A stretch of 64,000 nt of DNA, taken from assembly GCF_006345805.1 (NCBI RefSeq), contig NC_043019.1, positions 27,465,360 through 27,529,359 of the forward strand, written 5' to 3'. Source of the stretch: Octopus sinensis. Taxonomy: Eukaryota. Made by a program: the position numbers and the translations under genes. Positions 1 through 64,000 of the stretch are shown piece after piece. Below the pieces are notes generated by a model. The model was not told the DNA's origin. It ran no database searches and saw only the letters and a list, made by a program, of their open reading frames with translations. How positions within the stretch are numbered: the first letter of the stretch is position 1; each line of letters opens with the position of its first letter.

Positions 1-35
1 CACCTGCAGAGGGCGTCACTAATCATAACACGAAT

Positions 36-33569: not shown

Positions 33570-33645
33570 ATGGATAAACTAAAAATAAATATCCGTGCAG
33601 TCTTACAGAGTGCTAAGAATGGAGTGGAGGCTTCAAATTTTGAAG
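33570..33645 (+). CDS. TDRD7: TDRD7 coding exon 1 (MDKLKINIRAVLQSAKNGVEASNFE)
   Basis: Pyrimidine tract and CAG acceptor ending at 33563; ATG in caaaATGg context; G|gtaaat donor, phase 1. Confidence 0.88.
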
Positions 33646-43248: not shown

Positions 43249-46200
43249 ACACATACAGTGTGTGATAATGGATTGCTATAGAAAGAGGATTTAGTCTTGA
43301 GAAATATTACCCCCCCCCCACCGTCAAAGATGGTGGCCTTGCACCAGGATCATTAGCACACCGGCCAAAATGCATAGCAGTAAATTGTTCATCTTTATGT
43401 TCTGTGTTCAAATTCTATTAACTTTGTCTTTCAACTTTTAAGTGACAAAAAAAATTAAGTACCAGTTAGGTACTGGGGTCGATGTGATCAACTTATTCCC
43501 GCCCCAGAAATTGCTGGCCTTGTGCCAAAATTTTAAACCATTACCATCATCATCATCATTATTATTATTTATGTTTTGAGTTCAAATTCTGCCGAGGTCA
43601 ACTTTGCCTTTCATCCTTTCGGGGTCAATTAAATAAGTACCAGTTACGCACTGGGGTTGATGTAATAGTCTTGATCCCTTTGTCTGTCCTTGTTTGTCCT
43701 CTCTATGTTTAGCCCCCTGTGGACAATAAAGAAATAAATAACAACAAAATTATTATTATTATTATTATTCCCTTTCCTTTTCTGTCTATTTTAGCCTAAT
43801 CGGCGGCGTCCTCTCTTTGCCAATGAAAATCTTCAGAACTCCACTTGCAGATACAATAGATATGAAGATAACCGAAAGCGATACCCAAATGTGCGAGTGA
43901 CAGTCGACAGTTCAGGTCGTGGGCAGCAGGTAAACTGCCGGGGTGATGTGAAAAGATCTGTTGAGATGGGAGATATTAATGCAAATTGCAATAAGCATGA
44001 GATAAAATCTGTGATGATGTCTGTATCGAAGAGCAATCGTGTGTTTGAGAAAGCAGTCAAAGACATCTCCAGCAATGAGGTATTTGGTTCTATTTTGCTT
44101 TAAATTTTTAATATTCAGGTTATTCTGTCAAATGTAATGTTTGTTTTTTTTATGTTGTTTTAACCCTTTAGTGTTTGTTGCATTATTCTGCCAAAATTAA
44201 TCCTTTTTTTATCCACATTATTTTGAACTAATCATGCATTATCTTGTAGTTCTGAGATTTTGATGAGGTAGCTGTTAATTTTTAAAACGATATTGTAGGG
44301 TTGGTGTGAGAGACCAGATCTGGCCAGTTTGACCATAGAACAGGTAGAATACTTCTGGCCGGATATGGCCGGTTTAAATGCTAAAGGGTTAAATTAATCA
44401 TATGTTATCTTGTGAAGGCGCAATGGCCCAGTAGTTAGGGCAGCGGACTTGCGGTTGTAGGATCGTGGTTTCGATTCCCAGACCGGGCATTGTGAGTGTT
44501 TATTGAGCGAAAACACCTAAAGCCCCACAAGGCTCCGGCAGGGTGGGCGGGTGGGTGAACCCTGCTGTACTCTTTCACCACAACTTTCTATCACTCTTTC
44601 TTCCTGTTTCTGTTGTACCTGTATTTCAAAGGGGCCAGCCTTGTCACACTGAATCTGCCCGAGAACTACATTAAGGGTACGTGTGTCTGTGGAAGTGGTC
44701 AGCCACTTGTGCTTTAAAGAGCTGCAACATCAATGGTGCCAAGCTGCATCGGTATTTGCCTTTCCCTTGGATAACATCGGTGGCATGGAGAGGAGAGGCT
44801 GGTATGTGTGGGTGACTGCTGGTCTTCCATAAACAACCTTGCCCGGACTTGTACCTCGGAGGGTGACTTTCTAGGTTCAATTCCATGGTCATTCATGACC
44901 GAAGGAGGTCACAGTCACAATCAAATGTTGTCTTGTAGTTTAGAGATTTCAATGATGCGATTGTGTATTTTTAGAATGACATTGTAGGGTTGAGGTGAGA
45001 GGCCAGATCTGGCCAGTTTGAATGCTAAAGGGTTTAATCATTTTCTTTTTTTAACCACTGGTTCTCATCCGTTTTCCATCTATGGACCCCTTTGATTACT
45101 ATTTTATTCTGGCGGACCCCTCGTAGCCATTCGTTGCTTAAAATCTAGTTTTATAGAAACTTCTTTCAAAAGTGCTACTTGTGTAGGCTGATCTATGTGA
45201 AACATCTGAGAAAAAAAGTTTAGCTGTTTCTTGGAATAAATGCATCTAAAAGCAAGATTTTTTTTCATGGACCCTTAGATTATTACTGTGGGTACCCAAT
45301 TTACTATTTTGTTCATGTGGAATCCCCAGGTGGGATCATATGGACCCCAGTTGAGGTCCTGAAGAATCCACTAGAGTGGATGCAAATACTAATAATATAT
45401 GATTTATAAAAACATGTGACATATTAATAAAAATCTGTAAATGTAAAACCATCCAGATTTCTGAGTACCTTAGTTTTTCTAATATATATATTTATATACT
45501 AGCAGTATCGCCCGGCGTTGCTCGGGTTTGTAAGGGAAATAACTATATAAGCATTTTTAGAGAGTTACTTCCCTTATAGATGCCAATTCGAGCTTTCTTA
45601 GCCATTTCTGTTTTGGTGTCTTCAAGCCATGAAGTCGTTGTTCTAAAAGAACGCTGGTCTCCTTGACAACGCTTTACGACGTTGATTTCCTTACACTCCC
45701 TTCCCCACAGCTTCACGAGGGAGGGAAGAAGGGGGAGAAGCAAACAGGTGCAGGTGTGACCATGGACGCCAACTCCGCCGCCATCGACACACGAAAAATT
45801 ATGCATTAAAATGGAATAAAAAATGATGTTAAATTATTTTTAAAATCGTAGACTCATCGTAGACGCGCACTAATACTCAGACGGGCTCGATATGAATCAC
45901 GACTATAAGATACCCGAATTTGGTTAAACTGCACCGCAAAATGTGGGAGTAGTTAGGAATCTAAATCGAAGGGGACAGACACTCACACAACTACAGTTTT
46001 ATATATATAGATATGCCAGGTCTGCCTGACTGGTTCCTGTGCTAGTGACATGTAAAACGCACCATTTGAATGTGGCTGATGCCAGTACCCACTGACTGGC
46101 TCCCATGCTGGTGGCTCATAAAAAGCACTATCCGAATGTGATCGATGCCAGGCCCGCCTGACTGGCTCCTGTGCTGGTGGCATGTAAAAAGCACCCACTA

Positions 46201-48911
46201 CACTCTTGGAGTGGTTGGCGTTAGGAAGGGCATCCAGCTGTAGAAATATTGCCAGATTAGATTGGAGCCTGGTGCAGCTGCTGGCTCTCCAGACCTCAAG
46301 TCAAACTATACAACCCATGCCAGCATGGAAAGCGGATGTTAAACTATGATGGTGGTGATGATGATGATGATCTCCTTCCATCCTAATGTGTTGCTACCTT
46401 TTGTTAATCAGCAGGTACCTTATGGCTCAATGAATACATTTCCTCTGGCCCCTCGATTCCAGAAACAGAAGAACAACACTCCAGGTTAGTAGTCATTTGA
46501 ACATACTGTGTACATACATATACATACATACAGGCACACACACATATGCATGCATGCATTGAGGTTGTATCGTTGTGCTCATTTCAACCTGCTAGAAATA
46601 ATAGCCAAGTTTCTCCTGAAAACCTCCTTTACCAATTTTTAAAAATAAAAGAGCACAGTGGCTGCTTTGTTTCTTTGTGGGAGGTGGGGCACCAGGCCAC
46701 ATTGTGCTTGGCAGTGGTGGATGCTTTAGTGAAATGATTTTAATATAAACTATACAGTAGGTGCAGGAGTGCCTGTGTGGTAAGTAGCTTGCTAACCAAC
46801 CACATGGTTCTGGGTTCAGTCCCACTGCGTGGCACCTTGGGCAAGTGTCTTCTACTATAGCCTCGGGCCGACCAAAGCCTTGTGAGTGGATTTGGTAGAC
46901 AGAAACTGAAAGAAGCCTGTCATATATATATGTGTGTGTGTGTGTATGTTTGTCCCCCTAGCATTGCTTGACAACCGATGCTGGTGTCTTTGCGTCCCCG
47001 TAACTTAGCGGTTCGGCAAAAGAGACCGATAGAATAAGTACTGGGCTTACAAAGAATAAGTCCCGGTGTCGAGTTGCTTGATTAAAGGCGGTGCTCCAGC
47101 ATGGCCGCAGTCAAATGACTGAAACGAGTAAAAGAGAGTAATCCTTGTTGAAGGATCTCTGGAGTAGCATGACTTGACAGGGTGCATAACTTGCAGATAG
47201 AGTCTCTCCAGGACTCTGCATTGGAGGGGTTCACAACTCTGATCCTCCAGATATTTGATTAGAATACTGCAGGAAAGAATCATAAGGTGGATTCTTGCCA
47301 ACTGGCTGGTAACTTAACAGAAGACCAAAATGAGATGATCTCGGTTGGTTGTCTTTGGGAATACAGCAGGAAGGTCTCTTGATGGTTGCTTCTGACAGAA
47401 CCTTAACAGAGAAGGTGCCTGAGGATTCTACCTCCATGACTTTACCTTTCATCCTTTTGGCGTCAATAGAACAAGTACCAGTTGAACACTGGGGTCGATG
47501 TAATCAACTCATCCCCTCTCCCAAAATTGCTCCCCTTGTGGCAAAATTGAAATCATTATTATTATTACGGAGATGTACTTGCATAGCAAGTAATTTGATC
47601 TGAGATCGTGTGCTGAAATGAAAACAATTGCAGCGTGGAAGGTGTTTGTAAGCCATTTAAGAAACACACAAAAGCTGTTTGATTCACTTCAACATTTAAG
47701 TTTAATTTGTCAAAATATTTTCGTCGCTTTAAGACCGCGACCTGTTCACTGACAAAAATCCATGCAGCACGGATTTTTGTCAGTGAACAGGTCGCGGATT
47801 TTAGCGCCGAAAATATTTTGACAAATTAAACTTAAATGTTGAAGTGAATCGAACGGCTTTTGTGTGTTTCTTAAATGGCTTATAAACACCTTCCACTCAT
47901 TATTATTATTATCACTAAAAAAAAATATCTTTGATTCTTCACTGAAAATGTAATTTTAAAATGGTATCTTAGTAACTGTAAATTATTTCCAGATAAAATG
48001 GGCAGAGAAGATGGATGGGTGGATATACAATAACGACCCTCCTGAGATATTTTAATGTACAATATTTAAAATGTGATTTATAGCCTTTATCTAAATGTTT
48101 TATTTTGTTTGTGTTGGACAGCACCAGATTTTGTGAAAGGAAGGCATGAGCATACACCAAGATCAAATAAAGGTAAGTTTATTACATGTACACACATGCT
48201 TGCATACACACAATATAATCTATGTACATACACGATATATATACACACACAGACATGTGTGGCTGTCATTAAGTCTTACTTCTTCACGTGTGATTGTGTG
48301 TGTGAAGCTAAGCACCATAGCTATCAAATATGACCCAGTAGCAGGTACCATGATTTTGACTGTTTTTTGGGGCTAATATTACATCAAGTTGTACCGATAT
48401 AATGTAGGATAAATATAATAATAATAATAACAATAATCCTTGGATGGAATTTATAAACATTTAATGCACAAATCACATGACTTTTATGATCAAAGTCTGT
48501 ATTCCTGGGATGATTATGGATACTATGGACTATACTGTAATCATCCCAGAAAGACACAATGCAATCTTAAGACTCATGTAATTTGTGGAAACATGTGTAG
48601 CAAGGATTATTGTTATTATTATTGAGTGAGAGAGCAGTGCATGCCATCAAAGTGACACTGGGGTAAAATATACGAAGCCCAATATACCCATCATGACTAA
48701 CCGTCTGATAAGGGTACACCAGGCACATGCATCACAACCATATGTGCATGACATGGTGATCTCACATCAAGATAAATAGTGCATGACCTTGCAGGTGGGG
48801 CCCTAGTTAGAATTTTCTTCTGGTCGAGTATTGAGGCAAGTGTAAACAAAGTTCATTGTCCAATGAATGAGGGGTACTCATAAGTGGGCCGGTTGTCCCT
48901 ACAAATCTTTA

Positions 48912-49390: not shown

Positions 49391-51374
49391 TTGTGTCTGT
49401 TTGTCCCCCCAGCATCACTTGGCAACTGATGTTGGCATGTTTACATCCCTGTAACTAAGCAGTTCGGCAAAAGAGACTTACAGAATAAGTACCAGACTTA
49501 CAAAGAATAAGTCCAGGGGTCGATTTCTTTGACTGAAAAGCGGTGCTCCAGCATGACCACAATCATTTTGACTGAAACAAATAAGAGAGTAAAAGAATGT
49601 TCAACACAAATGTTTATGGCAAAATTTCCTGTAACCTTCTGGTGATGGTAATACTTTTGTGATTGTAAATTTGAAAAAAAATCATTTTAACGTTTGTTTG
49701 TTTCTATTTCCAGTTTCCTCATCAGTATTGGATGGCAAACAATACACCGAATGTCTTGTAGAGTTTGTGTCGAAGAATTCCTTATCTTTTGCAATACAGG
49801 CATTACCTGTTGAAAATGGATTCACCGCCTCTATACAAATCAAAAACGAGGTTTATGAAAGTAGTGGTTAGTCAACCTAATTTTTCTTTCCCTCATCATC
49901 CTTATTTAATGTTCTCGTCCATGGTTGCATGGGTTGGACAGTTTGACCAGAGCTGGTAAGCTGAAGGGCTGCACCAGACTCCAGTCTGATCTGGCAAGGT
50001 TTCTACAGCTGGATGCCCTTCCTAATGTCAGTCACTCTGAGAGTGTAACGGGTGCTTTTACATGCCACCATTATGGATGCCAATTGCACGACCCCAGTAC
50101 CTATGTGTGAAAACTTTTCATTGCTCACTGTTAAAACTATCATTTCTATTTTCCACATCACATCAGACCTCTCCAACAGATCTCTGCTGTTCTTGTCTTC
50201 TTCTCTCAATCAGGACTCACGCCATTAGCCATAAAGAATAATCTCTAATTCGAGCCTACTCTAAGCTACTAAGAATGCGTGTGGCAGCTTGAAGATCCAC
50301 CCACCACACGGTTGCATGGGCGCGAAAGCTACGTCGTTATTCTCATTCCGTAAACGGTGGCTTTTAACGGGTGGAGAGCTGAACCATCCTGGGGTACAGA
50401 GGATTCGCAATCTAGACTAGGGTCTGAAAGTTTACTGCACCATAGTGGGTTATACCATGGTTCCTCTGCTTTGTGGGAGAAGTAGGAAGAAAGAGTGAAA
50501 GTTGTGGTGAAATAGTACAGCGGGATTCACCACCACCACCTCGCCGGAGCATCGTGGAGCTTAGATGTTTTCGCTCAATAAACACTCACAATGCCTGGTC
50601 TGGGAATCGAAACCACGTTCTTATGACCGCGAGTCTGCTGCTCTAACCACTGGGCCATTGCGCCTCCACTGCTGTTGTTGTTGCAGTTGCTGTTCAGTTC
50701 CAGGTTAGGCATGTATAATCAAATGTTTAACCCTTTAAAATTTAAACCGGCCATATTCGACCAAAAGTATTATGCCTGTTTTATGTTCAAACTGGCCAGA
50801 TCTGGTCTCTCACACCAACCCTACAATATCATTTTAAAAATTAACAGCTAACTCATAAAATCTCATAGCTTCAAGATAATGCGTGATAGTTCAAAACAAT
50901 GTAGATAAAAGAGGATTAATTTTGGCAGATTAATGCGAACACTAAAGGGTTAACAGTTGTGACAATCCTGTCTTACTTTCAAACATAGCATAGTAGTCTA
51001 TTTTCAGAATTCTAGTGTGTGATATGTGGGAAATCTGGCTGCTATACTTAGCTCATCAGGTGGACGACCGGTTTGTATGCACCATTCTTGAATTGCAGAG
51101 GATTATGGGAATTGAGACTGGGATGGATGTTGTGAAAAGAAATGGGATGAGGTGGTCGTGTCACGTACTGAGGAAGGATGGAAGTGAGTAGATGAGAAGA
51201 ATGATTCTGTGGAAGAAAGTAGAGGAAAGAGAAGACTAAGGAAGACACGGCTATAGATGATGGAGGAGGTAATGAGGACAAGGGGATTAGTTAGAGATGT
51301 GGATGATAGGGCACACATGGCTAATTGTTTTTATCAAACAGGGAAAAGGCCTTAAAACGCCCTTTTTTTTTTTT

Positions 51375-51426
<52 letters not shown>

Positions 51427-51623
51427 ATTGCTGTTATGTTAAACTGTTGTATGGCCAAATTTGCTTGCAATAACTGATTCTTTTGGTCAAACTATTGTAT
51501 TTCCAGCTGCTTCAGATGCTAATATGTCAAAACTTGTCAAAGTGTAGTACAACGGTTTTGCTATGGAATGGGGGAAACTATTTTTTCGTTTTGAACTTAC
51601 AACACTTTTGCATAATAGCAACA

Positions 51624-51655
<32 letters not shown>

Positions 51656-51667
51656 ATATATAGTGTA

Positions 51668-51707
<40 letters not shown>

Positions 51708-52315
51708 TACACTCATATATATATATATATAGTGTAGTATATATATATATATATATACTACACTCACGGAGTGGTTGGCGTTAGGAAGGGCATCCAGCTG
51801 TAGAAACATTGCCAGATAAGACTGGAGCCTGGTGCAGCCTTCTGGCTTCCCAGATCCCTGGTCGAACCGTCCAACCCATGCTAGCATGGAGAACAGACGT
51901 TAAACGATGATGATATCATCATCATCATCATCGTTTAGCGTCCGTTTTCCATGCTAGCATGGGTTGGACGGATATATATATATATATATATATTGGCCTG
52001 CTCGCTTAGCCAGTGTGATGGCGTCATTTGAAGGCTAAAACAATGCGAAGCGCATTGTGACCAGCGATGTGTAGCAACATCTGATAGCCTGGTTGGTCAC
52101 AGTGATCACGGTGATATATATATATATATATATATGGCTTGGCCAGCTGTGTGTGGGAAAATATATTTTCTTTCTGACTCCTCCAAAAATTCTTTCTAAT
52201 ATTTCATACTGAAACCAGTAATATTTTATTAAACATTCTCTAAAATATACTTCTGTGCATTTTCCAACTTTATTTACCTTTTTTAACTATATATATGTAT
52301 ATATATATATTATAT

Positions 52316-52365
<50 letters not shown>

Positions 52366-55300
52366 GTAACTCTTGTTCTTTCAGCCCGCTTCCCCAGTGA
52401 ACAAGAAGCGCAATACTCTGCAGCAAAGAATGCTTGTATCAGCCTTGGTCTTGATCCGTGTAAGTAATTTCAACATATCTTCAACATTCCGAATTTGTAG
52501 GTAACTGAACCCATAGCATGTATAGATACGTAACACCTACATCTTTTATCCTTACCTTCTCTTGTTTCAGTCAATAGACTGCGGCCATGCTGGGGGCACT
52601 GCATCGAGGACTTATTCCACTCAAATGAATCGACCCCAGTACTTTGTTTGTTTTTTGTTTTTTAAAGCCTAGTACTTACTCTATCGATTTTTTTTTTTTT
52701 TGGCTAAATCCCAAATATACACAGATGTAAACACACCAGTACCAGTTGTCAAGCGGTGGTGGGGGACAGACACCCCCCCACACACACTCACACTACAGGC
52801 TTCCACACAGTTTTCTTCTACCAAATCCATTTGCAAGGCTTTGGTCAACCTGAGGCTATAGAAGACCCAGGATGTCATGCAGTGGGACTGAACCAGGAAC
52901 CATGTGATTAGGAAGCATGCTTCTTACCACACAGCCCATACAGCCATGCCTCCCCCCACTTATGTATATGTAAGGACTCTCCCATTGATTTTAATATATT
53001 AATATTCTAGTTGTTTGATTTAGTTGATTTGCCTACTAATTGAACAAGGGGTAATAAGCAACATGGTTGAGTATTCCACAGACTTATGTACCCTTAATGT
53101 AAGTCTCAGGCAGAGTCAGCATGACAAGGAGACAAAGCTAGATGTTTGAATTACTGGTACACTCTGACAGTCTTCCATGCAGTTTCCGTTTCGACACTTA
53201 TCCAAGATGCCATGTCGTGGGTTTGAACCCTGCATCTCATGGCTCCAAAGTGAACGTCTTAACCATTCAAACATGCTCTGTCCATGTGTGTGTGTTGTAG
53301 AAAAATTGGACACTTGAAGACATTTGTTTATTGGAATGACAAATTTTGAGCTCTCTACCCCCTTTTGACCAGGCTCCCGTGGCTTTTATGGGTTTTTCCA
53401 CGAGTAACCTTTCAAAGGGCCTCCCCTATTGGGAGTTTTAATTGTTACTTATATTTCGTTGTTATCCTGCTTTTGTACATGGACTTTTTTCAAACGGACA
53501 AAACCCTTTGTAACTTGCGTCCTGTGTTTTGTCCCTTTATGTCTTAATTGATTTTTGTTAGCCCTTGTGGCCAATAAACGAATTAATTATTATTATTATT
53601 ATTATTAAGGCAACAAACTGGCGGAGTCATTAGCAAGCGAGGTAAAATGCTTAACAACATTTCGCCCGTCTTCACATTCTGGGTTCAAATTCCACTAGGT
53701 CACCTTTGCTTTCTGTCCTTTCGGGAGTTGATAAAATAAGAACCAGTTGAGTACTGAGGACGATGTAATCGTCTTCCCCCAAAGATTTCAGGCCTTCTGT
53801 TTATAGTAAGCAGGATTATTATTATTATTATTATTATCAATAATAATAAGACAGAAAGCGGGTAGAATCATTAGCACAGTGGACGAAATACTTAGCAATA
53901 TTTCGCCCATCACTACATTCTGAGTTCAAATTCTGCCGAGGTCAACTTTGCCCTTTCGTCCTTTCAGGGTCAAGTGAAACACTGGGGTCAATGTAATCGA
54001 CTAGTCCCTTCCCCCAAATTTCAAGTCTCGTGTAGGATGATTAATATTAAGGTGGCCAGCTAGCAGAATTGTTAGCATGCTCAGCATTTTGTCTGTCTTT
54101 ATGTTCTGAGTTCAGATTCTGCTGTGGTTAACCTAACATATCATCCTTTCAGGGTCAATGAAATAAATACTAATTGAACTCTGGGGGTAAGGTAATCAAT
54201 TACCACTCCCCACCCCCCAAATTGCAGGCCTTGTGCCAATAATTGAAAGGACGGTTATTAATAATAATGGCAAGGCGCTGGCAGAAGCTGCCAAGTATTT
54301 TGTGTGTGTCTTTACATCCAGAGTTCAATATAGGCCTTCTGTCTATAGCAGAGAGGATGATTGTTGGTGAGGCACTTGTAGTTTTTGTGGGGTTTTCCAT
54401 GAATAGCCTAAAAGTGCCTCCCACTATGGGGAATTTTATTTGTTTTTCTTTATTTTATTTACACATTCTAAAACCTTTTGTATTGTCCTGTTTGTCATTT
54501 CATGTTGTTTTTATGTAAGCCCTTGTGGCCAAGAAAAGAATTATATTATTATACTTATTACTAAAGCGGTGAGCTGGCAGAATCGTTAGCACATCAAATG
54601 AAATTCTTAGCAGTATTTTACCTGTGCTACATTTTGAGTTCAAATTCCGCTGATGTTGACTTTACCTTTCATCCTTTTGGCGTCAATAGAACAAGTACCA
54701 GTTGAACACTGGGGTCGATGTAAGCAAATCATCCCCTACCCCTAAACTGCTGCCCTTGTGGCAAAATTTGAAACCATTATTATTATTATTATCGCTGAAA
54801 ATGTATTTTTAGAATGGTATCTTAGTAACTGTAAATTATTTCCAGATAAAATGGATGATCCTGTAGGAATTGATGAACATGAACTGAAGAAAAGGGTCCA
54901 GCAGGTAGGTGAGCCTTCAATCACCAGAAAACATAACCCTTTTTCTGTTGTTGTTTAGCACCAATTCAGCCATGATTGAATAGCTGTGTTCAAGTGCTTT
55001 CCAACTGTGACCATCACGTTTTTTTAAGAGCATCTAGGACTGTGTTATCAAATGTGTCCCTCCCTTATTAAATAAAGTAGGGTGTGATTTTGAAAATTTG
55101 GTTGCTTTTCTAGCAGGTCAGGTGAGCACCGAGAGGCCAGGTGACCACACAGAAGCAACTTTGATTTTATTTTGGTTTTTGTTATTTGCAACGGAAACAG
55201 TGTTAGTTCAAACTAGTAATGTATATATCATACCCAAAGCATGTATAATGTTGAAAGCCTTGTCAACTATAGTCTTCATCTTGGGAAAGCGCCTCTTATA

Positions 55301-58008
55301 GATGTATAGTGTATAAAATTCAGAAAACATACCAGCAACAGGCTGAAATCGTCAAGTAGTGGCATTGCTAAATCCAGATTTCAGCCTTTTCTGAGCTTCA
55401 CCAATAGCAAGTATGAACTGGCACCATAAGTAGGAATTGGTTGATACAGCATTAAGCTGCAAACCTGAATAGAAATTCATTATTAGCAACGGAAGCTGTA
55501 TTAGTTAAAAAATTGGCGAACTTAAAGTGTACATATGTTGAAAGCCTTCTAAACTGTAGTATTCGTCTCGAGAAAATATCTCTTATAGATGTATAGTGTT
55601 AAAAACGGAAAGATATCAGCTGCAGGTGAAGGTTGCCCAGCGTTGGTGGTAAAATTACTAGGTCTAGATTTCTGTTTATTAGCTTCATCAGTAGCAAATA
55701 TCTATGCCCCCTCATGCCAAGCAAACATCATCTGCTAGATGATGTAGTTAAACAATGACTGAAAGGTCACTGATGTTGTATGTTAGCAGCAGGCTGAACA
55801 GAAATTCATTATTAACAATGGAAGGAATATTAATTCAAAATTTGCAATGTATAGACTTTAAATCATTGAATCAGGAGCAATCTCAAGCTGGTTGGTGTCA
55901 AAAGGGTGAGGTTAAAATTGCTGAAGTAATTTGACACACGGAGATGTACTTGCATAGGAAGTGACCTGATCTGAGATTGTGTACTGGAACGAAAACAATT
56001 GCAGCGTGGAAGGTGTTTATAAGCCATTTAAGAAACACACAAAATCCGTTAGATTCACTTCAACGTTTAAATTTAATTTGTCAAAATATTTTCATCACTT
56101 TGAGACCATGACCTGTTCACTGACAAAATTTCGTGCTGCATATGACAAATTTAGGATCTTTTCGGTTTGGGCAGTTTTTTCTAGCAGTGTCATATGAAAT
56201 TGTCACCCATAATTATGACCCTAGAATCGATCTATTGCATTTCAATCTGTTTTAGGGTTAGGGTTAGGGGTGGGGGGAAAGGGTATCTTTTTTTTCTTCA
56301 CAAATGTAAATAAACCCAATCTGATTCTTAAACGAGGAACATATTCATATGGTACAGAATGTTTTTTTACCTCAATGGACGTCATTGATTGGTTGAAATT
56401 GCAGAAATTGAAGGAAAAAAACATATATCTTACAAACTATAGAATTTTCTCAATAAAGCCAAGAGAAAAAGATGTTTTATAAACACATTCTACCAGTATA
56501 CGAAGTTTAAAATTTTTTTAGTTATCTAGAAATTATGTTAAAAACTGCCGTTCAAACTGAAAAGATCCCAAATTTAATTTGACAAATTAAATTTAAATGT
56601 TGAAGTGAATCTAACGGATTTTGTGTGTTTCTTGAAAGGCTTATAAAACACCTTCCACACTGCAATTATTAGGTTGTCCCAAAAGTTCGTAAACACTTGC
56701 GAAAATTGAATTTTTACTTGCCAAGTACTAACAAAAACAACAAAAATTATTCCTCAAAATAAAGACTATTATTTTCCAAGACTTTCTACGAACTTTTGGG
56801 ACAACCTTATAATTTGATACACATTTTTACAGTAAGTTTTGTTTTGGTTACAAAACAAACTTCATTCACTACTTGTTTTATTTTTAGTTTAATATTGATT
56901 TTTGCTTGTTTCCAATTTACCAAATCTAGATTGTTGTTCAGAATGGGCTGTGGTTGAAAAATATGGGAGAGACATATGAAAAACAGTTTGGAGAGAAAGC
57001 TCCGGATAATCTACAAGACCTGGTACGATCTTGGGTCGACGTGTTTAAGATAGAACAGTAAGTAACGAGCCATTTAATGAATAACTTAACTTTTAATTTT
57101 AATCAGTCGAGGTAATTGCTTCGTCTCACTTGTAAATGTTTTCTTCTTCACTTGGCTATTAACCCTGCAATTAAATTTTATGGGCCCCCTGGCCCTCGTC
57201 TGGCCGTTTGCCAGCCTTGTCTGGCACCTGTGCAGGTGGCACATAAAAAGCACCCACTACACTCACGGAGTGGTTGGCGTTAGGAAGGGCATCCAGCTGT
57301 AGAAACATTGCCAGATCAGACTGGGCCTGGCGCAGCCTTCTGGCTTCCCAGACCCCAGTTGAACCGTCCAACCCATGCTAGCATGGAAAGCAGACATTAA
57401 ACGATGATGATGATGATTCCACAAATGATGTTAAATATCTTTAAAAAAAAATACCAGTAGGATGTTCTGCAAGTCACGTTGTCTCAGTAAACCTTCTACT
57501 ATAAGACTTGGGATGACCAAAGCCTTGTGAGTAGATTTGGTAGATGGAAACTGAAAGAAGCCTGTTGATGCCCATTGTGTGTGTGTGTGTATGTGTGTTA
57601 CTGTGTCTTTACCTCCCCATCATGTTATGGTTGTAAACAAGTATCACTGTAATATAAGTGGTGTCTTTCGTTTCCAGTCTTCAGTGAAAGCTGCTGATGA
57701 TGATGATGATGGATTGTTTTGTCTATTGAATTTATTTGTCATCAGAATAAGAAACTATCCTGTTTAGCTTAGGCAGTAACAAAATATATATATATACATA
57801 TGGCATGGCTGTGTGGTTAGGGAGCTTGCTTCCTAGCTACATGGTTTCGGGTTCAGTCCCACTGTGTGGCACTTTGGGTAGGTGTCTTCCACTATAGCCC
57901 CGAGCCGACCGGAGCTTTGTGATTGAATTCACTAGGTGGAAGTTACTGCCGTGTGTGTATGTGTGCGTATAGCTGCTCAGTGCCTCTCCGAAAGAGAGAG
58001 AGGGGATA

Positions 58009-58844: not shown

Positions 58845-61655
58845 ACTCTTTACTCTTTTACTTGTTTCAGTCATTTGACTGCGGCCATGCTGGAGCACCG
58901 CCTTTAGTCAAGCAAATTGACCCCGGGGCTTATCCTTTGTAAGCCCAGTACTTATTCTATTGGTCTCTTTTTGCCGAACCGCAAAGTGACGGGGACGTAA
59001 ACACACCAGCATCGGTTGTCAAGCAATGCTAGGGGGACAAACACAGACAAACATATACACACACACTTATATATATATATATACATATATACGACGGGCT
59101 TCTTTCAGTTTCCGTCTACCAAATCCACTCACAAGGCATTGGTCGGCCCGGGGTTATAGCAGAAGACACTTGCCCAAGATGCCATATATTATGTATGTAT
59201 GTATATCATCAGACGTCCGTTTTCCATGGTGGTATGGGTTGGATGGTTTGGCAGGAGTTGGCAGGACCAGGGCCCACACCAGATATATGTGTGTGTTTAT
59301 ATACACCCCCACCCCATATATGCATTCACAGGTTTGGCCGAAGTTTGTTTCCCAACCACATGGTCTTGGGTTCACTTCCACTGCATAGCACCTTGGGCAA
59401 GTGCCTTCTATTATAACCCCAGGCCAACCAGAGTCTTGTGAGTGGGTTTGGTAGAGGGAAACTGACAGAAGCCCTATATGTGTGTGTGTTGTGGTAGGTG
59501 TCTTTATTACTTTAGTGAAATGCAAACAAACAAGAAAGTTGGAGTAGGAACTCAGTGAATCATCAATTGAATAAGTAATCTTTATCGCATGGATTGAGCA
59601 CCCCACATCATGCTGCAGAAAATCTGCCTCAACAAATTCTATCTGTGGGTGTCTGTTACTCTCTCTTTTGGCTTGGCATCATGTGTTCGTTGTAAAACGA
59701 TTGTCACTATCGTACAAACAGTGTCCTTTATTTCCTATCTTCTGTAAAAAAAAAAAAAGCATCTGGCCATGGGAAATATTTACCTTGTTTGGAAACAGGT
59801 GAGGTGTTGGGGTTGGCAACAGGAAGAGCATCCTGCTGCAGACAATCTGCCTCAACAAATGTAAGCATGGAAAAGTAGAGCTCAAGCGATGATGATGGCT
59901 ATGTCTGTGTCCAAAAGAGACAATGATTTGATGCATCTTCTGCTTTAAAATTCATGCTTGAATCTGCATGTTCAAAGATAAATTCTTGTCTTTCTTACTT
60001 GAGCGAAACATGTACAAACAAGGAAGCTAGAGTAGCAACTCAGTGAATCTTCAATTGTATAAGTAATCTTTATTGTATGGATTGAGTTTTATTTTCTCCA
60101 ATTACTGCTGTGTGTCTTTAAAAAAAGCACCCCCCCTCCACTGTAATTCTTCCTGTATAACAGCAGGTATAAATCTGCAGGAGAGACAGAAAGCTGGCAG
60201 AATTGTTAGCATGTTGGCCAAAATGCTAAGTGGCTTTTTTGTCTTTATGTTCTGAGTTCAAATTCTGCTGAGGTCGGCTTTGCCTTTCATCCTTGCGGGG
60301 TAAATAAAATATGTACCAGTTGAGCACTGAAGGGGGATTGTGTTGATGCTATCAACTTAGCCCCTCCCTTCAAAAATTTCTGACCTTGGGCCAAAATTTG
60401 AAACAAATATTACCTGCAGAAATTCCGACCTGCTTGTGTTGCTTCACAGATCTCCATGAGATAGTGTTGACCCTTCAATTGTGAAATTAAACTTTAGAGT
60501 TATTCCAGTAATGGTGTTAAATATCTTCCAAAACAAATTGAATTGGTATTTTCTGTAAGTCACATTGCCTCAATAAACTTGGCATATCTCAACAAAAAGT
60601 AGTTTCCAACATGACATTCCTCCATAAAAGATAGATTGGGATATAAACACTGCTTTCTGCAGTTAAGGGAAATGAAATTTTGAGTTGATATATCTGAACC
60701 CCTTAGTAAAAGGGTTAAAATAAAAGGGATCTTTTCGGTTTGAACGGCAGTTTTTTCTAGCAGTGTCATATGAAATTGTCACCCATAATTATGACCCTAG
60801 AATTGATCTATTGCATTTCAATGTCTGTTAGGGTTAGTTATGGTTGGTTAGGGGTGGGGGAAGGGTATCTTTTTTTCTTCACAAATGTAAATAAACCCAA
60901 TCTGTTTCTTAAACGAGGGACATATTCATGCGGCACAGAATGCTTTTTAACTCAATGGACGTCACTGATTGGTTGAAATTGCAGAAATTGAAGAAAAAAA
61001 ACAACAAATATCTTACAGACTATAGAATTTTCTCAATAAAGCCAAGAGAAAAAGATGTTTTATAAACACATTCTACCAGTATACGAAGTTTAAAATTTTT
61101 TAGTTACCTAGAAATTGTGTTAAAACCTGCTGTTCAAACTGAAAAGATCCAATAAAAGTAGGGGACATTGAATAATATCCTGGATTTGTGTGTCTGGAAA
61201 GAAAGTAGAACAGTCATGGTTGCACTGTCCTACTTTGATAAATCCCTCAACCTATTAACTGTGAAATTAAACTTCATGGTTGCTCCAGTCATGATGTTAA
61301 ATATTTACCAAAAGACAGAATTGGTATTTTTTGCCAGTCATCCAGAAAATAGTTTCAAGACTGACATCTTTCAACAAAAAGATAGATTGAAATATAAACA
61401 CTGCTTTTTGCAGTTAAGGGAGATGAAGTTTTGAGTGGATATATCTGATTTCTGCAGTAAAAGGGTTAAATATTTCAATTGTGTCCATAGTGCAGGTTGT
61501 TTAAAGCATAACAAACAGCTGTTATATAAGATAAACAATAATATTATAGAGAGTGATATTAATCATATTATGTATTATTTGTTAACAGAGCTTGTGCTAC
61601 ACAGATGGAAATCGTGTATCCAGTGAAACAGTCCTTGGTGTCATTTACAGGCAAG
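33570..61655 (+). CDS. TDRD7: Tudor domain-containing protein 7 homolog, 5' part (11 coding exons, 394 codons; eLOTUS - linker - dsRBD-like - LOTUS2; continues past the window)
   Basis: Hand-assembled exons 33570-33645, 37336-37441, 38794-38902, 43795-44079, 46412-46484, 48122-48172, 49714-49866, 52385-52459, 54846-54904, 56930-57057 and 61589-61655. All introns are GT-AG, all phases are compatible and there are no stops. The N-terminus IRAVLQSAKNGV..HYRSLT..YGYKSLDELMANIPDTV matches TDRD7 LOTUS1 (human LRAVLQSHKNGV..EYRSLTG..LGFPTLEAYLRSVPAVV, recalled) better than TDRD5. Confidence 0.88.
33800..34187. mobile_element. piggyBac-like MITE with an internal ~167-bp tandem duplication
   Basis: TTAA TSDs (33796-33799, 34188-34191); TIRs ccctttcgttac / gtaacgaaaggg. 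Confidence 0.85.
35671..36028 (-). mobile_element. Complete 358-bp non-autonomous retroposon with 13-bp TSD, (TACAAG)n-like tail and candidate HDV-like ribozyme head
   Basis: Direct repeat catttaagccctt at 35658-35670 and 36029-36041. The minus-strand 3' end is gctacaagtacaagtaaa. The body is GC-rich. Confidence 0.75.
37336..37441 (+). CDS. TDRD7: TDRD7 coding exon 2 (DHYRSLTKENIQYAQYGYKSLDELMANIPDTVYLA), LOTUS1 core
   Basis: tttag acceptor, aa|gtaagt donor; phase 1 in, phase 2 out. Confidence 0.92.
37626..37949 (-). mobile_element. Helitron-like non-autonomous element
   Basis: The minus strand starts a|tctattatataaaatccg, like the other Helitrons here. The 3' end (ctcgt) is atypical. Confidence 0.4.
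38794..38902 (+). CDS. TDRD7: TDRD7 coding exon 3 (NYRGTKIYRAVCTDSTYHLQKLIDRQKSVSARKSKPV), LOTUS1 end and eLOTUS extension helix
   Basis: ttttccag acceptor, gtt|gtatgt donor; phase 2 in, phase 0 out. Parallels human ITCYAMACTETARIAQLVARQRSSKRK (recalled). Confidence 0.9.
39360..40640 (+). mobile_element. Penelope-like element (Zn-finger and GIY-YIG region) with 3' pLTR
   Basis: PCSHPCCCTC...FTCTSTNVIYCISCSLCPSLYIGQMGCCLVDWFAEHLR is a Cys-rich linker plus a VIY..YIG.T..L..RF.EH-type endonuclease motif. A hammerhead-like motif lies at 40514-40550. Confidence 0.8.
40514..40550 (+). ncRNA. Variant minimal hammerhead motif (CUGUUGA core)
   Basis: cttt(t)-CTGTTGA-a-gagt[gtag]gctt-GAAA-ca-tt-aaag; stem I is cttt/aaag. 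Confidence 0.45.
40653..42950 (+). mobile_element. RTE LINE 3' end with five-fold tandem amplification of its 3' UTR
   Basis: ERRLRWYGHVTRK...CGRGRPRKTWDEVVKHDLRTLGLTKEMSRDRDLWKYAVREKTRQD*. The marker atagatgaacatca occurs five times (~41008, 41373, 41788, 42075, 42416). Ends in a (GAT)n tail. Confidence 0.88.
43795..44079 (+). CDS. TDRD7: TDRD7 coding exon 4 (95 codons, linker PNRRRPLF...KDISSNE)
   Basis: Pyrimidine tract and ttag acceptor, gag|gtattt donor; open 285 nt in phase 0; non-repetitive sequence. Confidence 0.8.
44164..44388. mobile_element. piggyBac-like MITE (an oppositely oriented copy lies at 50731-50949)
   Basis: TTAA|ccctttag...ctaaaggg|TTAA. Confidence 0.75.
44414..44890 (+). 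mobile_element. Chimeric SINE: family D tRNA head and body joined to the 3' half of family C
   Basis: Head gaaggcgcaatggcccagtagttagggcagcg...ggtttcgattccc. From ~44710 the sequence matches 32650-32830. An antisense family D copy lies at ~50470-50670. Confidence 0.65.
45499..46011 (-). mobile_element. Non-autonomous Helitron
   Basis: The minus strand begins a|TCtatatatataaaac and ends with hairpin cccgagcaacgccggg plus CTAG|t (AT target). Confidence 0.8.
46412..46484 (+). CDS. TDRD7: TDRD7 coding exon 5 ((Q)VPYGSMNTFPLAPRFQKQKNNTP)
   Basis: Tandem CAGCAG acceptor and ccag|gttagt donor. It is the only phase 0-to-1 exon I found that links exon 4 to exon 6. Confidence 0.75.
47568..47896. mobile_element. 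Palindromic (foldback) element with ~127-bp arms
   Basis: 47635-47761 is a near-perfect reverse complement of 47771-47896. A second family member lies at ~55938-56665. Confidence 0.85.
47993..48033 (+). pseudogene. Pseudo-exon: duplicated acceptor and first 9 nt of TDRD7 exon 9 inside intron 5
   Basis: 47960-48001 is identical to 54813-54854 over 42 nt, including ttccag|ataaaatgg. The upstream flanks 47441-47503 and 54661-54723 are also identical. Confidence 0.65.
48122..48172 (+). CDS. TDRD7: TDRD7 coding exon 6 (APDFVKGRHEHTPRSNK)
   Basis: ggacag acceptor after a T-rich tract, ag|gtaagt donor; symmetric phase 1-1, 51 nt. Confidence 0.75.
49714..49866 (+). CDS. TDRD7: TDRD7 coding exon 7 (VSSSVLDGKQYTECLVEFVSKNSLSFAIQALPVENGFTASIQIKNEVYESS), first part of dsRBD-like domain
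   Basis: tttccag acceptor, g|gttagt donor; phase 1-1, 153 nt. Confidence 0.83.
52385..52459 (+). CDS. TDRD7: TDRD7 coding exon 8 (ARFPSEQEAQYSAAKNACISLGLDP), final helix of dsRBD-like domain
   Basis: ctttcag acceptor, t|gtaagt donor; phase 1-1, 75 nt. Confidence 0.85.
54846..54904 (+). CDS. TDRD7: TDRD7 coding exon 9 (YKMDDPVGIDEHELKKRVQQ), start of LOTUS2
   Basis: tttccag acceptor, cag|gtaggt donor; phase 1 in, phase 0 out. Confidence 0.83.
56154..56568. mobile_element. MITE with GGATC termini and 8-bp TSD (Merlin- or hAT-like), nested in the palindromic element
   Basis: TIRs ggatcttttcggtttg / caaactgaaaagatcc; TSD caaattta on both sides; internal (TTAGGG)2. Confidence 0.85.
56669..56809. 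mobile_element. Mariner-type mini-MITE, 141 bp
   Basis: TIRs aggttgtcccaaaagttcgta / tacgaacttttgggacaacct; TA TSDs. Confidence 0.8.
56930..57057 (+). CDS. TDRD7: TDRD7 coding exon 10 (IVVQNGLWLKNMGETYEKQFGEKAPDNLQDLVRSWVDVFKIE), LOTUS2 core
   Basis: ctag acceptor (an in-frame alternative cag ends at 56941), ca|gtaagt donor. NGLW and W..V..IE match the TDRD7 LOTUS2 pattern (human NNGIWI...WPHICTVEK, recalled). Confidence 0.87.
60727..61150. mobile_element. Second copy of the GGATC-terminal MITE
   Basis: TSD aataaaag at 60719-60726 and 61151-61158; body nearly identical to 56154-56568. Confidence 0.85.
61589..61655 (+). CDS. TDRD7: TDRD7 coding exon 11 (QACATQMEIVYPVKQSLVSFTGK), LOTUS2 end
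   Basis: ttaacag acceptor, aag|gtaggc donor; phase 2 in. The IVYP motif matches the LOTUS terminal strand (human LLLYP). Confidence 0.78.
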
Positions 61656-63404: not shown

Positions 63405-64000
63405 TCTTAATTAAAAGTACAATTAATTTCTTGTCTCTCTTTTCTTTGTTTCATTTCATTTGTTAAGGAAGTTGAAATAAAACATGCTGATTTGTTACCA
63501 GTCGGGTAAGTTTACATTTCATCCTCCTCCTCTTTATTCTGCCTTCTGCTCTTTCCTCAGCCTCCCCCTCTACCTCTTTCCTCTTCCTCCTCCTCTATCA
63601 CCGAATTCTCATCATTGTAGTACCACAGCTACTACCACACCACCACTGCTATTTCACCATGACTCCACCGCCACTATCCCCTCCACCTACAATTACTGAC
63701 AACGTGAGACCTCGTTACTTGATTAATTTGACTTCCTAATTATAATGGCCAATCATCATCATCATTATTTGATGTCTGTTTTTCCATTCTGGCATGGGTT
63801 GCACAGTTTGACAGTAGCTGCCCACGCCTCATGTCTGCTTTGGCATGGGTTTTTATGGCTGGATGCCCTTCCTAACACCAACCACTTTACAGAGGGTACT
63901 GGGTGCTTTTATGGAACACTGGAATGGGTGCATTTATGTAGCACCAGTACAGGTGCTTTCTATGTGGGCCCCAGCACCCAGATCTCCTTCAAACCACCCC

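What the first reader, a model, noticed from the sequence alone, without database searches (positions are those of the whole stretch)
49714..52459. Degenerate dsRNA-binding domain inserted between LOTUS1 and LOTUS2 of TDRD7
Seen: exons 7-8 (about aa 242-307) encode KQYTECLVEFVSKNSL-SFAIQALPVENG-FTASIQIKNEVYESS-ARFPSEQEAQYSAAKNACISLG. Known: this follows the dsRBD pattern (helix1 L.E..QK; F...V.I....Y; final helix KKEAEQ.AA..AL..L), and vertebrate TDRD7 is annotated with only LOTUS and Tudor domains. The basic KKxA patch reads EQEA here, as in type-B dsRBDs that serve as protein-interaction modules. The domain sits on two symmetric phase-1 exons, which fits exon shuffling or modular skipping. 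Inference: this is an eLOTUS-dsRBD-LOTUS architecture that could link the Vasa/piRNA machinery to dsRNA-pathway partners (Dicer, ADAR, Staufen-like). I cannot tell how widespread it is among invertebrates.
Basis: partly seen in the sequence, partly recalled or inferred. Interest (0 to 1): 0.72.

Follow-up and report, generated by a model that had tools for sequence, protein, structure and literature searches.

The report
Degenerate dsRBD-fold module in octopus TDRD7
Two small exons of the octopus TDRD7 germ-granule gene encode a roughly 70-residue domain predicted to fold like a double-stranded-RNA-binding domain but lacking the usual RNA-contact residues, a domain combination I found described in no paper; so far it is seen only in the genus Octopus and its function is untested.

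Summary
Window 49714-49866 and 52385-52459 are exons 7 and 8 (153 and 75 nt, both phase 1-1) of the Octopus TDRD7 orthologue, and they encode aa 234-309.

**In the transcript.** All seven public gene models from three Octopus species include both exons. Between O. sinensis and O. bimaculoides they evolve under constraint (4 synonymous : 1 non-synonymous change, no indels).

**Fold.**
- Sequence evidence for a dsRBD is below significance: Pfam dsrm E=0.06 (14.3 bits against a cutoff of 23); best PDB hit DRB4, E=0.25.
- Two single-sequence AlphaFold2 runs both give alpha-beta-beta-beta-alpha. The domain-only run has pLDDT 82 and pTM 0.72.
- All top 50 Foldseek PDB hits in both searches are dsRBDs (TM up to 0.75-0.78; rmsd about 1.0 A over 67 columns).

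**Context.** The flanking domains are an eLOTUS (best PDB hit TDRD7, 2.9e-8) and one mLOTUS (only PDB hit TDRD7 LOTUS2-3, 7.6e-5).

**Likely role.** The module is acidic (pI 4.65). KKxAK reads EQEAQ, and the beta1-beta2 loop is a 2-residue turn with no His. It most likely works as a "type B", protein-binding dsRBD, but this is untested.

**Limits.**
- No isoform skips the exons.
- A flanking direct repeat is a younger, lineage-specific duplication and does not mark how the exons arrived.
- No relative was detectable outside Octopus, but that search was low-powered.
- No paper I found describes a dsRBD in TDRD7.

The parts
33570..33645 (+). TDRD7 coding exon 1 (ATG at 33570; aa 1-25), start of the eLOTUS
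   Evidence: Exact match to XP_029649814.1 and unique splice solution; Pfam OST-HTH E=2.9e-11 over aa 3-57
37336..37441 (+). Exon 2 (aa 26-60), eLOTUS
38794..38902 (+). Exon 3 (aa 61-97), end of the eLOTUS including the C-terminal extension helix TDSTYHLQKLIDRQ
   Evidence: the alignment runs to residue 88 of the TDRD5 and Oskar eLOTUS structures. My first guess for exon 3 (about 37.6 kb) was wrong.
43795..44079 (+). Exon 4 (aa 98-192), basic linker
   Evidence: linker aa 98-233 has pI 10.2 and net charge +13
46412..46484 (+). Exon 5 (aa 193-216), linker; ends in phase 1
48122..48172 (+). Exon 6 (aa 217-233; APDFVKGRHEHTPRSNK), a basic stretch directly N-terminal to the module; phase 1-1
49714..49866 (+). 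Exon 7 (aa 234-284): helix alpha1 (V238-K254), beta1 (F259-V266), beta2 (G269-I276), beta3 (E279-E282) of the dsRBD-like module; phase 1-1
   Evidence: DSSP of the AF2 models
52385..52459 (+). Exon 8 (aa 285-309): beta3-alpha2 loop and helix alpha2 (E290-S304; SEQEAQYSAAKNACISLG); phase 1-1
   Evidence: Pfam dsrm positions 30-65 and DRB4 align here
54846..54904 (+). Exon 9 (aa 310-329), short spacer and start of the mLOTUS
56930..57057 (+). Exon 10 (aa 330-371), mLOTUS
   Evidence: the only PDB hit is TDRD7 LOTUS2-3 (2ly1), E=7.6e-5
61589..61655 (+). Exon 11 (aa 372-394), end of the mLOTUS
63468..63506 (+). Start of exon 12 (aa 395-407), lead-in to the first Tudor domain (Pfam TUDOR starts at aa 405); the exon's 3' end was not mapped and the rest of the gene lies beyond the window

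Best explanation
Exons 7 and 8 of the Octopus TDRD7 orthologue encode a compact module of about 70 residues (aa about 238-306) that is included in every annotated transcript model. It folds as a dsRBD (alpha1-beta1-beta2-beta3-alpha2) and lies between the Vasa-binding eLOTUS plus a strongly basic linker on one side and the single mLOTUS plus three Tudor domains on the other.

Shown: the exon structure, inclusion in all annotated models, purifying selection within the genus, the predicted fold, and the loss of the canonical RNA-contact signature.

Inferred: the three features that let a dsRBD clamp A-form RNA are degraded. The KKxAK lysines at the N-terminus of alpha2 are E290, Q291 and Q294. 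The beta1-beta2 minor-groove loop is a 2-residue turn without His. The net charge is about -3 rather than positive. The module therefore most likely does not bind dsRNA the canonical way. Instead it probably serves as a protein-protein or self-association surface, as the 'type B' dsRBDs do (Staufen dsRBD5, the third dsRBD of TRBP, PACT and Loquacious). That would give this germ-granule scaffold one more docking site. The partner is unknown.
For: - Exons, phases and splice sites.
- Identical peptide in 7 models from O. vulgaris, O. sinensis (3 isoforms) and O. bimaculoides (2 models).
- O. sinensis versus O. bimaculoides, aa 234-309: 4 synonymous and 1 non-synonymous change, pN/pS 0.07 (eLOTUS 0.03, mLOTUS 0.11). 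Exons are 97-98% identical without indels, while flanking introns are about 65-95% identical with indels.
- AF2 single-sequence models. The 166-aa construct gives H-E-E-E-H with pLDDT 79-91 over the module. The domain-only construct has mean pLDDT 82.4, pTM 0.72, five models at 82/82/75/62/59, and the same topology.
- Foldseek against the PDB: all top 50 hits are dsRBDs in both searches. DUS2 dsRBD gives TMq 0.73-0.75 and rmsd 1.0-1.2 A over 67-69 columns. Loquacious dsRBD3 and Staufen dsRBD5 give TMt 0.77-0.78.
- Weak but concordant sequence hits: Pfam's only hit is dsrm (E=0.062, profile positions 30-65 of 66). The best PDB phmmer hit is DRB4, with both of its dsRBDs aligned in the same register.
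- KK aligns to EQ against DRB4 dsRBD2.
- pI 4.65, net charge -3.3.
- The 2-residue beta1-beta2 turn is seen in the DSSP strings of both models.
- Context: LOTUS1 hits TDRD7 best, and the mLOTUS hits only TDRD7.
Against: - The sequence-profile score is below Pfam's gathering threshold, and the shuffle control shows E-values of that size arise by chance.
- The fold rests on AF2 predictions made without an alignment. In the longer construct only 1 of 5 models was confident.
- No experimental structure, binding assay or RNA-seq junction count was available.
- Constraint is measured on only 5 substitutions.
- The best structural matches (DUS2 dsRBD) are RNA binders that use an N-terminal extension, and here a basic stretch (exon 6, then a +13 linker) lies immediately upstream, so RNA binding is not excluded.
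- No partner is identified, so the protein-interaction role is an argument by analogy.
Confidence: 0.55

Rival explanations
1. The module is a working RNA-binding dsRBD with a non-canonical mode. The basic segment directly upstream (exon 6, KGRHEHTPRSNK, and the +13 linker) would supply the phosphate contacts that alpha2 has lost, as the N-terminal extension of the DUS2 dsRBD contributes to tRNA binding. TDRD7 would then gain affinity for structured RNA next to its G-rich-RNA-binding mLOTUS.
For: The closest structural matches by rmsd and TMq are DUS2 dsRBDs, including one solved with dsRNA. The upstream linker has pI 10.2 and net charge +13. A Glu in helix alpha1 (E250, in the L-x-E pattern) is retained (sequence).
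Against: The module itself is acidic (pI 4.65). All three KKxAK lysine positions are E, Q and Q. The beta1-beta2 loop is too short to reach a minor groove and has no His. DUS2 keeps its region-3 lysines (K419 and K420 are named as mutants in the PDB titles), unlike this module.
Confidence: 0.2
2. The module is a folded but functionally inert spacer or a relic: a dsRBD acquired once in the octopod lineage and kept only because removing it would disturb spacing or folding of the N-terminal region. It would have no specific ligand.
For: No relative was detectable outside Octopus. The canonical binding residues are lost. The disordered linker shows a similar pN/pS (0.10), so low pN/pS is not specific to the module.
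Against: The fold-determining residues are intact enough for a confident single-sequence AF2 prediction. There are no indels and only one conservative change (A263S) across species that differ by about 10% at synonymous sites. All isoforms keep it, even though skipping would preserve the frame.
Confidence: 0.15
3. It is not a dsRBD at all. The alpha-beta-beta-beta-alpha prediction and the weak dsrm hits would be coincidental, or an AlphaFold bias toward a common small fold.
For: Pfam score is below threshold. The full-length scan lists no dsrm at E<=1. One of 10 shuffles gave an equally 'good' spurious Pfam hit. There is no alignment depth behind the AF2 models.
Against: Three different methods point to the same family in the same register: the Pfam HMM, phmmer against the PDB, and AF2 plus Foldseek. 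They are not fully independent, since all read the same sequence. 50 of 50 top structural hits are dsRBDs in two separate models. The alpha2 core motif A-x3-AA-x2-A-x3-L is present. None of the 10 shuffles hit dsrm.
Confidence: 0.08

Closest known systems
Type B (non-canonical, protein-binding) dsRBDs: Staufen dsRBD5, Loquacious/TRBP/PACT dsRBD3
   Same: Same predicted alpha-beta-beta-beta-alpha fold (TMt 0.77-0.78 to Staufen dsRBD5 5cff and Loquacious dsRBD3 4x8w; PACT D3 and TRBP D3 are also among the hits). The C-terminal helix core motif is retained while the basic RNA-contact residues are lost. This is also a single degenerate copy inside a larger scaffold protein.
   Different: Sequence identity is only 15-21% to these particular domains. 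The host protein is a LOTUS/Tudor germ-granule scaffold, not a multi-dsRBD protein, so there is no neighbouring canonical dsRBD to supply RNA binding. No partner is known. Protein binding is inferred, not tested.
Canonical dsRBD (Pfam PF00035 dsrm; e.g. Xlrbpa dsRBD2 1di2, HYL1, DRB4, RNase III)
   Same: Length, topology and hydrophobic core. The best sequence hits are dsrm and DRB4. HYL1 dsRBD1 is the top Foldseek hit for the domain-only model (E=6e-4).
   Different: Below the Pfam gathering score. KKxAK reads EQEAQ. The beta1-beta2 loop is a 2-residue turn lacking the GPxH-type His. The module is acidic rather than basic.
DUS2 (tRNA-dihydrouridine(20) synthase) dsRBD
   Same: Best geometric match: rmsd 1.0-1.2 A over 67-69 columns, TMq 0.73-0.75. 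Both are single dsRBDs grafted onto a non-dsRBD protein and preceded by a basic segment.
   Different: DUS2 keeps the region-3 lysines and binds tRNA or dsRNA. Identity is only 19-22%. There is no evidence of common descent beyond the family level.
Vertebrate TDRD7 (and Drosophila Tapas, sea-urchin SpTDRD7)
   Same: Orthologous scaffold. The eLOTUS is best matched by TDRD7 structures 3rco and 2lh9 (2.9e-8). The mLOTUS is matched only by TDRD7 2ly1 (7.6e-5). There are three Tudor domains. NCBI names the gene TDRD7/7B.
   Different: Human TDRD7 is described with one eLOTUS, two mLOTUS and three Tudor domains, and SpTDRD7 with an intrinsically disordered region at aa 97-283 (PMC12925329). The octopus protein instead has a folded dsRBD-like module and only one mLOTUS in the corresponding stretch.

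Membership tests
dsRBD (Pfam PF00035 dsrm, DSRM-like clan) | Sequence matches the family profile above the curated (gathering) score | tested here: not met
   dsrm is the only Pfam hit, but at 14.3 bits / E=0.062 against a cutoff of 23. It scores 12.9 bits in the 160-aa construct and is not listed at E<=1 for the full-length protein. The shuffle control shows such E-values occur by chance.
dsRBD (Pfam PF00035 dsrm, DSRM-like clan) | 65-70 residue alpha1-beta1-beta2-beta3-alpha2 fold, with the two helices packed on one face of a three-stranded antiparallel sheet | tested here: met
   Prediction only. Two AF2 runs give H-E-E-E-H (domain-only pLDDT 82.4, pTM 0.72). Foldseek top 50 are all dsRBDs, TM up to 0.75-0.78, rmsd about 1.0 A. 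No experimental structure.
dsRBD (Pfam PF00035 dsrm, DSRM-like clan) | Conserved alpha2 core motif (A-x3-AA-x2-A-x3-L) and aromatic or hydrophobic residues in beta2 and beta3 | tested here: met
   EAQYSAAKNACISL aligns to SAEHAAAKIAVASL and LAEMSAAKVAFMSI of DRB4 dsRBD1 and dsRBD2. F270 and Y281 align to the F and F positions. Pfam profile positions 30-65 of 66 are covered.
Canonical (type A) dsRNA-binding dsRBD | Region 3: KKxAK lysines at the N-terminus of alpha2, which contact phosphates across the major groove | tested here: not met
   T-K-K-L-A-E of DRB4 dsRBD2 aligns to S-E-Q-E-A-Q (E290, Q291, Q294). That these lysines matter for binding is established knowledge, not tested here.
Canonical (type A) dsRNA-binding dsRBD | Region 2: extended beta1-beta2 loop (GPxH-type) that inserts into the minor groove | tested here: not met
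   In both models beta1 ends at V266 and beta2 starts at G269, so the turn is 2 residues (E267, N268). There is no His anywhere in the module.
Canonical (type A) dsRNA-binding dsRBD | Region 1: conserved Glu (with polar or basic neighbours) in helix alpha1; overall basic character | tested here: inconclusive
   E250 lies in an L-x-E pattern in alpha1, but the Pfam and phmmer alignments do not cover alpha1. The module is acidic: pI 4.65, net charge -3.3.
Canonical (type A) dsRNA-binding dsRBD | Binds A-form dsRNA in vitro | not testable with these tools
   Needs EMSA or fluorescence polarisation with recombinant aa 230-312, with and without the exon 6 peptide.
Type B dsRBD (protein-interaction module) | dsRBD fold that keeps the C-terminal core but has lost the basic RNA-contact residues | tested here: met
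   See the rows above.
Type B dsRBD (protein-interaction module) | Demonstrated protein partner or homodimerisation | not testable with these tools
   No interaction data. This is why 'works like a type B dsRBD' remains an inference.
TDRD7 orthologue | N-terminal extended LOTUS closest to TDRD7 | tested here: met
   Pfam OST-HTH 2.9e-11. PDB hits: TDRD7 3rco 2.9e-8 and 2lh9 1.2e-7, ahead of TDRD5 3s93 1.2e-6 and Oskar >=0.1. The alignments to TDRD5 and Oskar extend to residue 88, covering the extension helix.
TDRD7 orthologue | Downstream minimal LOTUS domain(s) | tested here: met
   Exons 9-11 hit only TDRD7 LOTUS2-3 (2ly1, E=7.6e-5; LOTUS2 15.6 bits, LOTUS3 8.5 bits). Pfam itself does not call it. 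Only one copy fits before the first Tudor domain at aa 405.
TDRD7 orthologue | Multiple C-terminal Tudor domains | tested here: met
   Pfam TUDOR, 3 stretches, E=2.4e-57 in the 1158-aa protein. These exons lie outside the window.

The most novel reading that the evidence does not exclude
In octopods, and perhaps more widely in cephalopods, TDRD7 has gained a dsRBD-fold adaptor. The adaptor would physically couple the Vasa/piRNA germ-granule scaffold to a dsRBD-recognising partner of the dsRNA pathways (Dicer helicase domain, ADAR, Staufen or another dsRBD protein by heterodimerisation), or would bind structured RNA together with the adjacent basic linker. That would be a lineage-specific rewiring of germ-granule and small-RNA or RNA-editing cross-talk, in a clade known for extreme RNA editing.
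Probability: 0.1. Interest if true: 0.7.

Novelty: new variant of a known kind. Interest (0 to 1): 0.36.

Why it matters
TDRD7 is a conserved germ-granule scaffold. Its known working parts are LOTUS domains, which activate Vasa and bind G-rich RNA, and Tudor domains, which read methyl-arginine on PIWI proteins.

A folded dsRBD-like module in what is a disordered linker in the deuterostome proteins described so far would be an unreported domain architecture for this family. It would also be a clean natural example of a degenerate dsRBD recruited into a non-dsRBD scaffold. If it binds a partner, it marks a testable, lineage-specific connection in cephalopod germ-granule biology.

The matter is modest as it stands:
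- The proteins are already in public databases under the right gene name.
- The module is seen only in one genus so far.
- It is predicted to have lost RNA binding.
- No function has been shown.

Tried and rejected
1. **Word-indexed homologue search, three times** (75-aa module, 61-aa LOTUS1, 244-aa composite). Nothing was found, although 100%-identical Octopus proteins are in that collection. The failure is a property of the index, not evidence of absence.
2. I did not work around this. I searched exon 7 as a contiguous window translation, then used exact substrings of the protein that search returned, which the tool accepted.
3. **Wrong first exon 3.** My first exon 3 (about 37.60-37.68 kb) gave phase conflicts and was wrong. 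The annotated protein places exon 3 at 38794-38902.
4. **Block-insertion hypothesis, rejected.** A 198-bp block ending 9 nt into exon 9 (54657-54854) is repeated at 47437-48001, so the two copies bracket exons 6-8, which are all phase 1-1. O. bimaculoides has exons 6-8 but only the exon 9 copy, and its intron 5 runs uninterrupted across the site. The two copies differ by about 5-7%, less than the roughly 10% synonymous divergence between the species. The upstream copy is therefore a younger duplication in the O. sinensis/vulgaris lineage and does not mark how the exons arrived.
5. **Pfam on exons 9-11** gave no LOTUS hit. phmmer against the PDB resolved it.
6. **Shuffle control** showed the Pfam dsrm E-value is not convincing by itself.
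7. **JGI metagenome scan** for exon 7 relatives found none.
8. **ARAGORN on intron 7** found no tRNA.
9. **Literature searches** for TDRD7 or LOTUS with dsRBD, DSRM or double-stranded RNA-binding domain found nothing relevant. One broad mollusc search was uninformative.
10. **Considered and rejected: a degenerate LOTUS.** LOTUS is a winged-helix fold (alpha-beta-alpha-alpha-beta-beta), which is not the predicted topology, and no LOTUS structure appears among the top 50 hits listed in either Foldseek search.

Full report
**What is at the coordinates.** The window is eukaryotic, about 40% GC, and full of SINE-like repeats and AT microsatellites.
- Exon 7 is 49714-49866 (153 nt; acceptor tatttccag|, donor |gttagt).
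- Exon 8 is 52385-52459 (75 nt; acceptor ttctttcag|, donor |gtaagt).
- Both are phase 1-1.

**Which gene, and whether the exons are used.** An exhaustive phmmer search of exon 7 alone against 1.84 billion cluster representatives returned one cluster. Its representative is a 1158-aa Octopus vulgaris protein (CAI9739538.1). The other members are Octopus sinensis 'tudor domain-containing protein 7/7B' isoforms X1-X3, two O. bimaculoides TDRD7 models, and a 1514-aa O. vulgaris fusion model (P0002).

The window encodes residues 1-407 of O. sinensis XP_029649814.1 exactly. It does so in 12 exons with a unique AG/GT-consistent solution, and exons 7 and 8 are aa 234-309. All seven models contain both exons. 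The isoforms differ only by a 32-aa cassette between Tudor domains 1 and 2 and at the C-terminus. I had no RNA-seq junction counts.

**Constraint.** I fetched the O. bimaculoides locus (L001), found all 12 exons in it, and compared the coding sequence.
- The module has 4 synonymous and 1 non-synonymous change (A263S), giving pN/pS 0.07.
- For comparison: eLOTUS 0.03, linker 0.10, mLOTUS 0.11; overall pS 0.10.
- With about 22% of sites synonymous, 4 or more of 5 changes being synonymous has a binomial probability of about 0.01. This is my arithmetic on the numbers.
- Exons 7 and 8 are 98% and 97% identical without indels, while the 120-nt intron flanks are about 65-95% identical with indels.
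- The counts are small, but the exons behave as constrained coding sequence.

**Is it a dsRBD? Sequence evidence is suggestive only.**
- Pfam's only hit is dsrm: E=0.062, 14.3 bits against a gathering score of 23, covering profile positions 30-65 of 66.
- The best PDB sequence hit is Arabidopsis DRB4, E=0.25, with both of its dsRBDs aligned in the same register.
- In a control with ten composition-preserving shuffles, one gave an unrelated Pfam hit at E=0.009 and none hit dsrm.
- The Pfam number alone would therefore not carry the claim.

**Fold evidence is much stronger.**
- AlphaFold2 without an alignment, on aa 230-395, gave H(238-254) E(259-266) E(269-276) E(279-282) H(290-304), with block pLDDT 79-91 over the module. 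Only one of five models was confident, and the LOTUS part was poor.
- The module alone (83 aa) gave the same topology with mean pLDDT 82.4 and pTM 0.72. The five models scored 82, 82, 75, 62 and 59.
- Foldseek against the PDB returned only dsRBDs in the top 50 for both models. Hits include DUS2, HYL1, DRB2/3/4, Loquacious, Staufen, PACT, TRBP, DHX9/MLE, RNase III, ADAR2 and Xlrbpa.
- DUS2 dsRBD gives TMq 0.73-0.75 and rmsd 1.0-1.2 A over 67-69 columns. Staufen dsRBD5 and Loquacious dsRBD3 give TMt 0.77-0.78.
- Three methods thus converge on one family in one register. I put the dsRBD fold at about 0.85. The remaining doubt is that everything structural is a prediction from a single sequence.

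**Context.**
- Residues 1-97 are an eLOTUS: Pfam OST-HTH 2.9e-11. Best PDB hits are TDRD7 3rco (2.9e-8) and 2lh9, then TDRD5, then Oskar, with alignments running through the extension helix.
- Exons 9-11 get no Pfam call. Their only PDB hit is the TDRD7 LOTUS2-LOTUS3 tandem 2ly1 (E=7.6e-5), and they score better against LOTUS2.
- The first Tudor domain starts at aa 405, so the octopus protein has a single mLOTUS.
- The architecture is therefore eLOTUS - basic linker (pI 10.2, +13) - dsRBD-like (pI 4.65, -3.3) - mLOTUS - 3 x Tudor.
- Published descriptions give human TDRD7 one eLOTUS, two mLOTUS and three Tudor domains. Sea-urchin TDRD7 has a disordered region at aa 97-283 (PMC12925329).

**How it most likely works.** From established knowledge of dsRBD-RNA complexes (the Xlrbpa-dsRNA structure 1di2 and later reviews; my knowledge, not tested here), binding uses three elements: helix alpha1, the beta1-beta2 loop with its His, and the KKxAK lysines at the start of alpha2. 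In this module:
- The lysine positions are E290, Q291 and Q294 (alignment to DRB4 dsRBD2).
- The beta1-beta2 connection is a two-residue turn, and the module has no His.
- The net charge is negative.

This is the 'type B' pattern, whose characterised members act as protein-binding or dimerisation modules. I therefore favour a docking or self-association role within the germ-granule scaffold (about 0.5 given the fold).

The main rival takes its cue from the DUS2 match and the basic exon 6 peptide immediately upstream. It proposes non-canonical RNA binding helped by an N-terminal basic extension (about 0.2). An inert folded spacer (about 0.15) and a false fold assignment (below 0.1) remain possible.

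**Origin and breadth.**
- Exons 6, 7 and 8 are all phase 1-1. Exon 5 ends and exon 9 begins in phase 1, so the block could be added or removed in frame. This is compatible with exon shuffling but does not show it.
- I found a direct repeat bracketing exons 6-8: 47437-48001 and 54657-54854, the latter running 9 nt into exon 9. I tested it as an insertion footprint.
- The test failed. O. bimaculoides has the exons but only the exon 9 copy. The copies are less diverged (5-7%) than synonymous sites between the species (10%). The repeat is a later duplication.
- Outside Octopus, the exon 7 search found nothing at E<=1e-3. The identical 50 residues scored 90.8 bits at E=4.7e-22, so the cutoff is about 30 bits, which I estimate at roughly 40% identity over the exon.
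- A well-conserved counterpart in annotated molluscs would have been seen. A fast-evolving one, or one in unannotated cephalopod genomes, would not.
- A metagenome scan added nothing.
- No recognisable donor paralogue exists at that sensitivity.

**Novelty.** Seven full-text searches found no paper describing a dsRBD in TDRD7, TDRD5, Tapas, Tejas or any LOTUS/Tudor protein. The precomputed Pfam annotation of the O. bimaculoides gene lists only OST-HTH and TUDOR. The proteins themselves are public and correctly named. I could not check InterPro, CDD or Gene3D. I classify this as a new variant (an unreported domain architecture) of a known kind, of moderate-to-low interest until a partner, a function or a wider distribution is shown.

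Noticed in passing
window 47437-48001 versus 54657-54854 (and L001 18816-19041): A block of about 200-230 bp, made of the 3' part of a SINE-like repeat, the exon 9 acceptor and the first 9 nt of exon 9, is duplicated into intron 5. It carries a 330-370-bp insertion in the upstream copy. This creates a decoy 3' splice site (TTTCCAG|ATAAAATGG) about 120 nt upstream of exon 6. It is absent from O. bimaculoides, so it arose after the species split. The upstream copy keeps about 29 bp that the functional copy has lost.
   Followed up: yes
window 3-1346 (+): A 448-codon open frame encodes the HYLS1 orthologue (Pfam HYLS1_C, E=8.9e-26). One O. vulgaris gene model (P0002, 1514 aa) fuses most of this HYLS1 exon, short of its C-terminus, onto the N-terminus of TDRD7. 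This is probably an annotation read-through artefact, since the other six models start at MDKLKINIR.
   Followed up: partly
window 33570-63506 versus L001 10924-22316: The same 12 exons span 30 kb in the window (O. sinensis-type allele) but 11.4 kb in the O. bimaculoides assembly. For example, intron 6 is 1541 nt against 305 nt, and intron 8 is 2386 nt against 484 nt. The extra sequence is largely SINE-like repeats and AT microsatellites. L001 has one N-run in intron 7 (17634-17944), so part of the difference could be an assembly gap.
   Followed up: partly
aa 310-405 of the protein (window exons 9-12): Octopus TDRD7 has room for only one minimal LOTUS between the dsRBD-like module and the first Tudor domain, whereas vertebrate TDRD7 has two. 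The dsRBD-like module therefore occupies roughly the position of one LOTUS.
   Followed up: partly
window 40990-41764 and 42540-42797 (intron 3): Tandem arrays: a 365-bp unit x2 (94% matches), a 40-bp unit x3.7, and a 62/127-bp unit x4/x2. They belong to a repeat whose translation recurs many times in the window.
   Followed up: no
tool behaviour, versus 31, 34: the search for homologous proteins returned nothing for peptides that are 100% identical to proteins held in the same collection (P0001-P0007). The word index appears not to cover these eukaryotic entries, so its 'no homologue' result should not be read as absence for metazoan queries.
   Followed up: yes
window 48122-48172 (exon 6), codon for aa 228: The window encodes HEHTPRSNK, as in O. 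sinensis and O. bimaculoides, while the O. vulgaris model has HEHIPRSNK. The window is therefore from O. sinensis or an O. sinensis-like allele.
   Followed up: no
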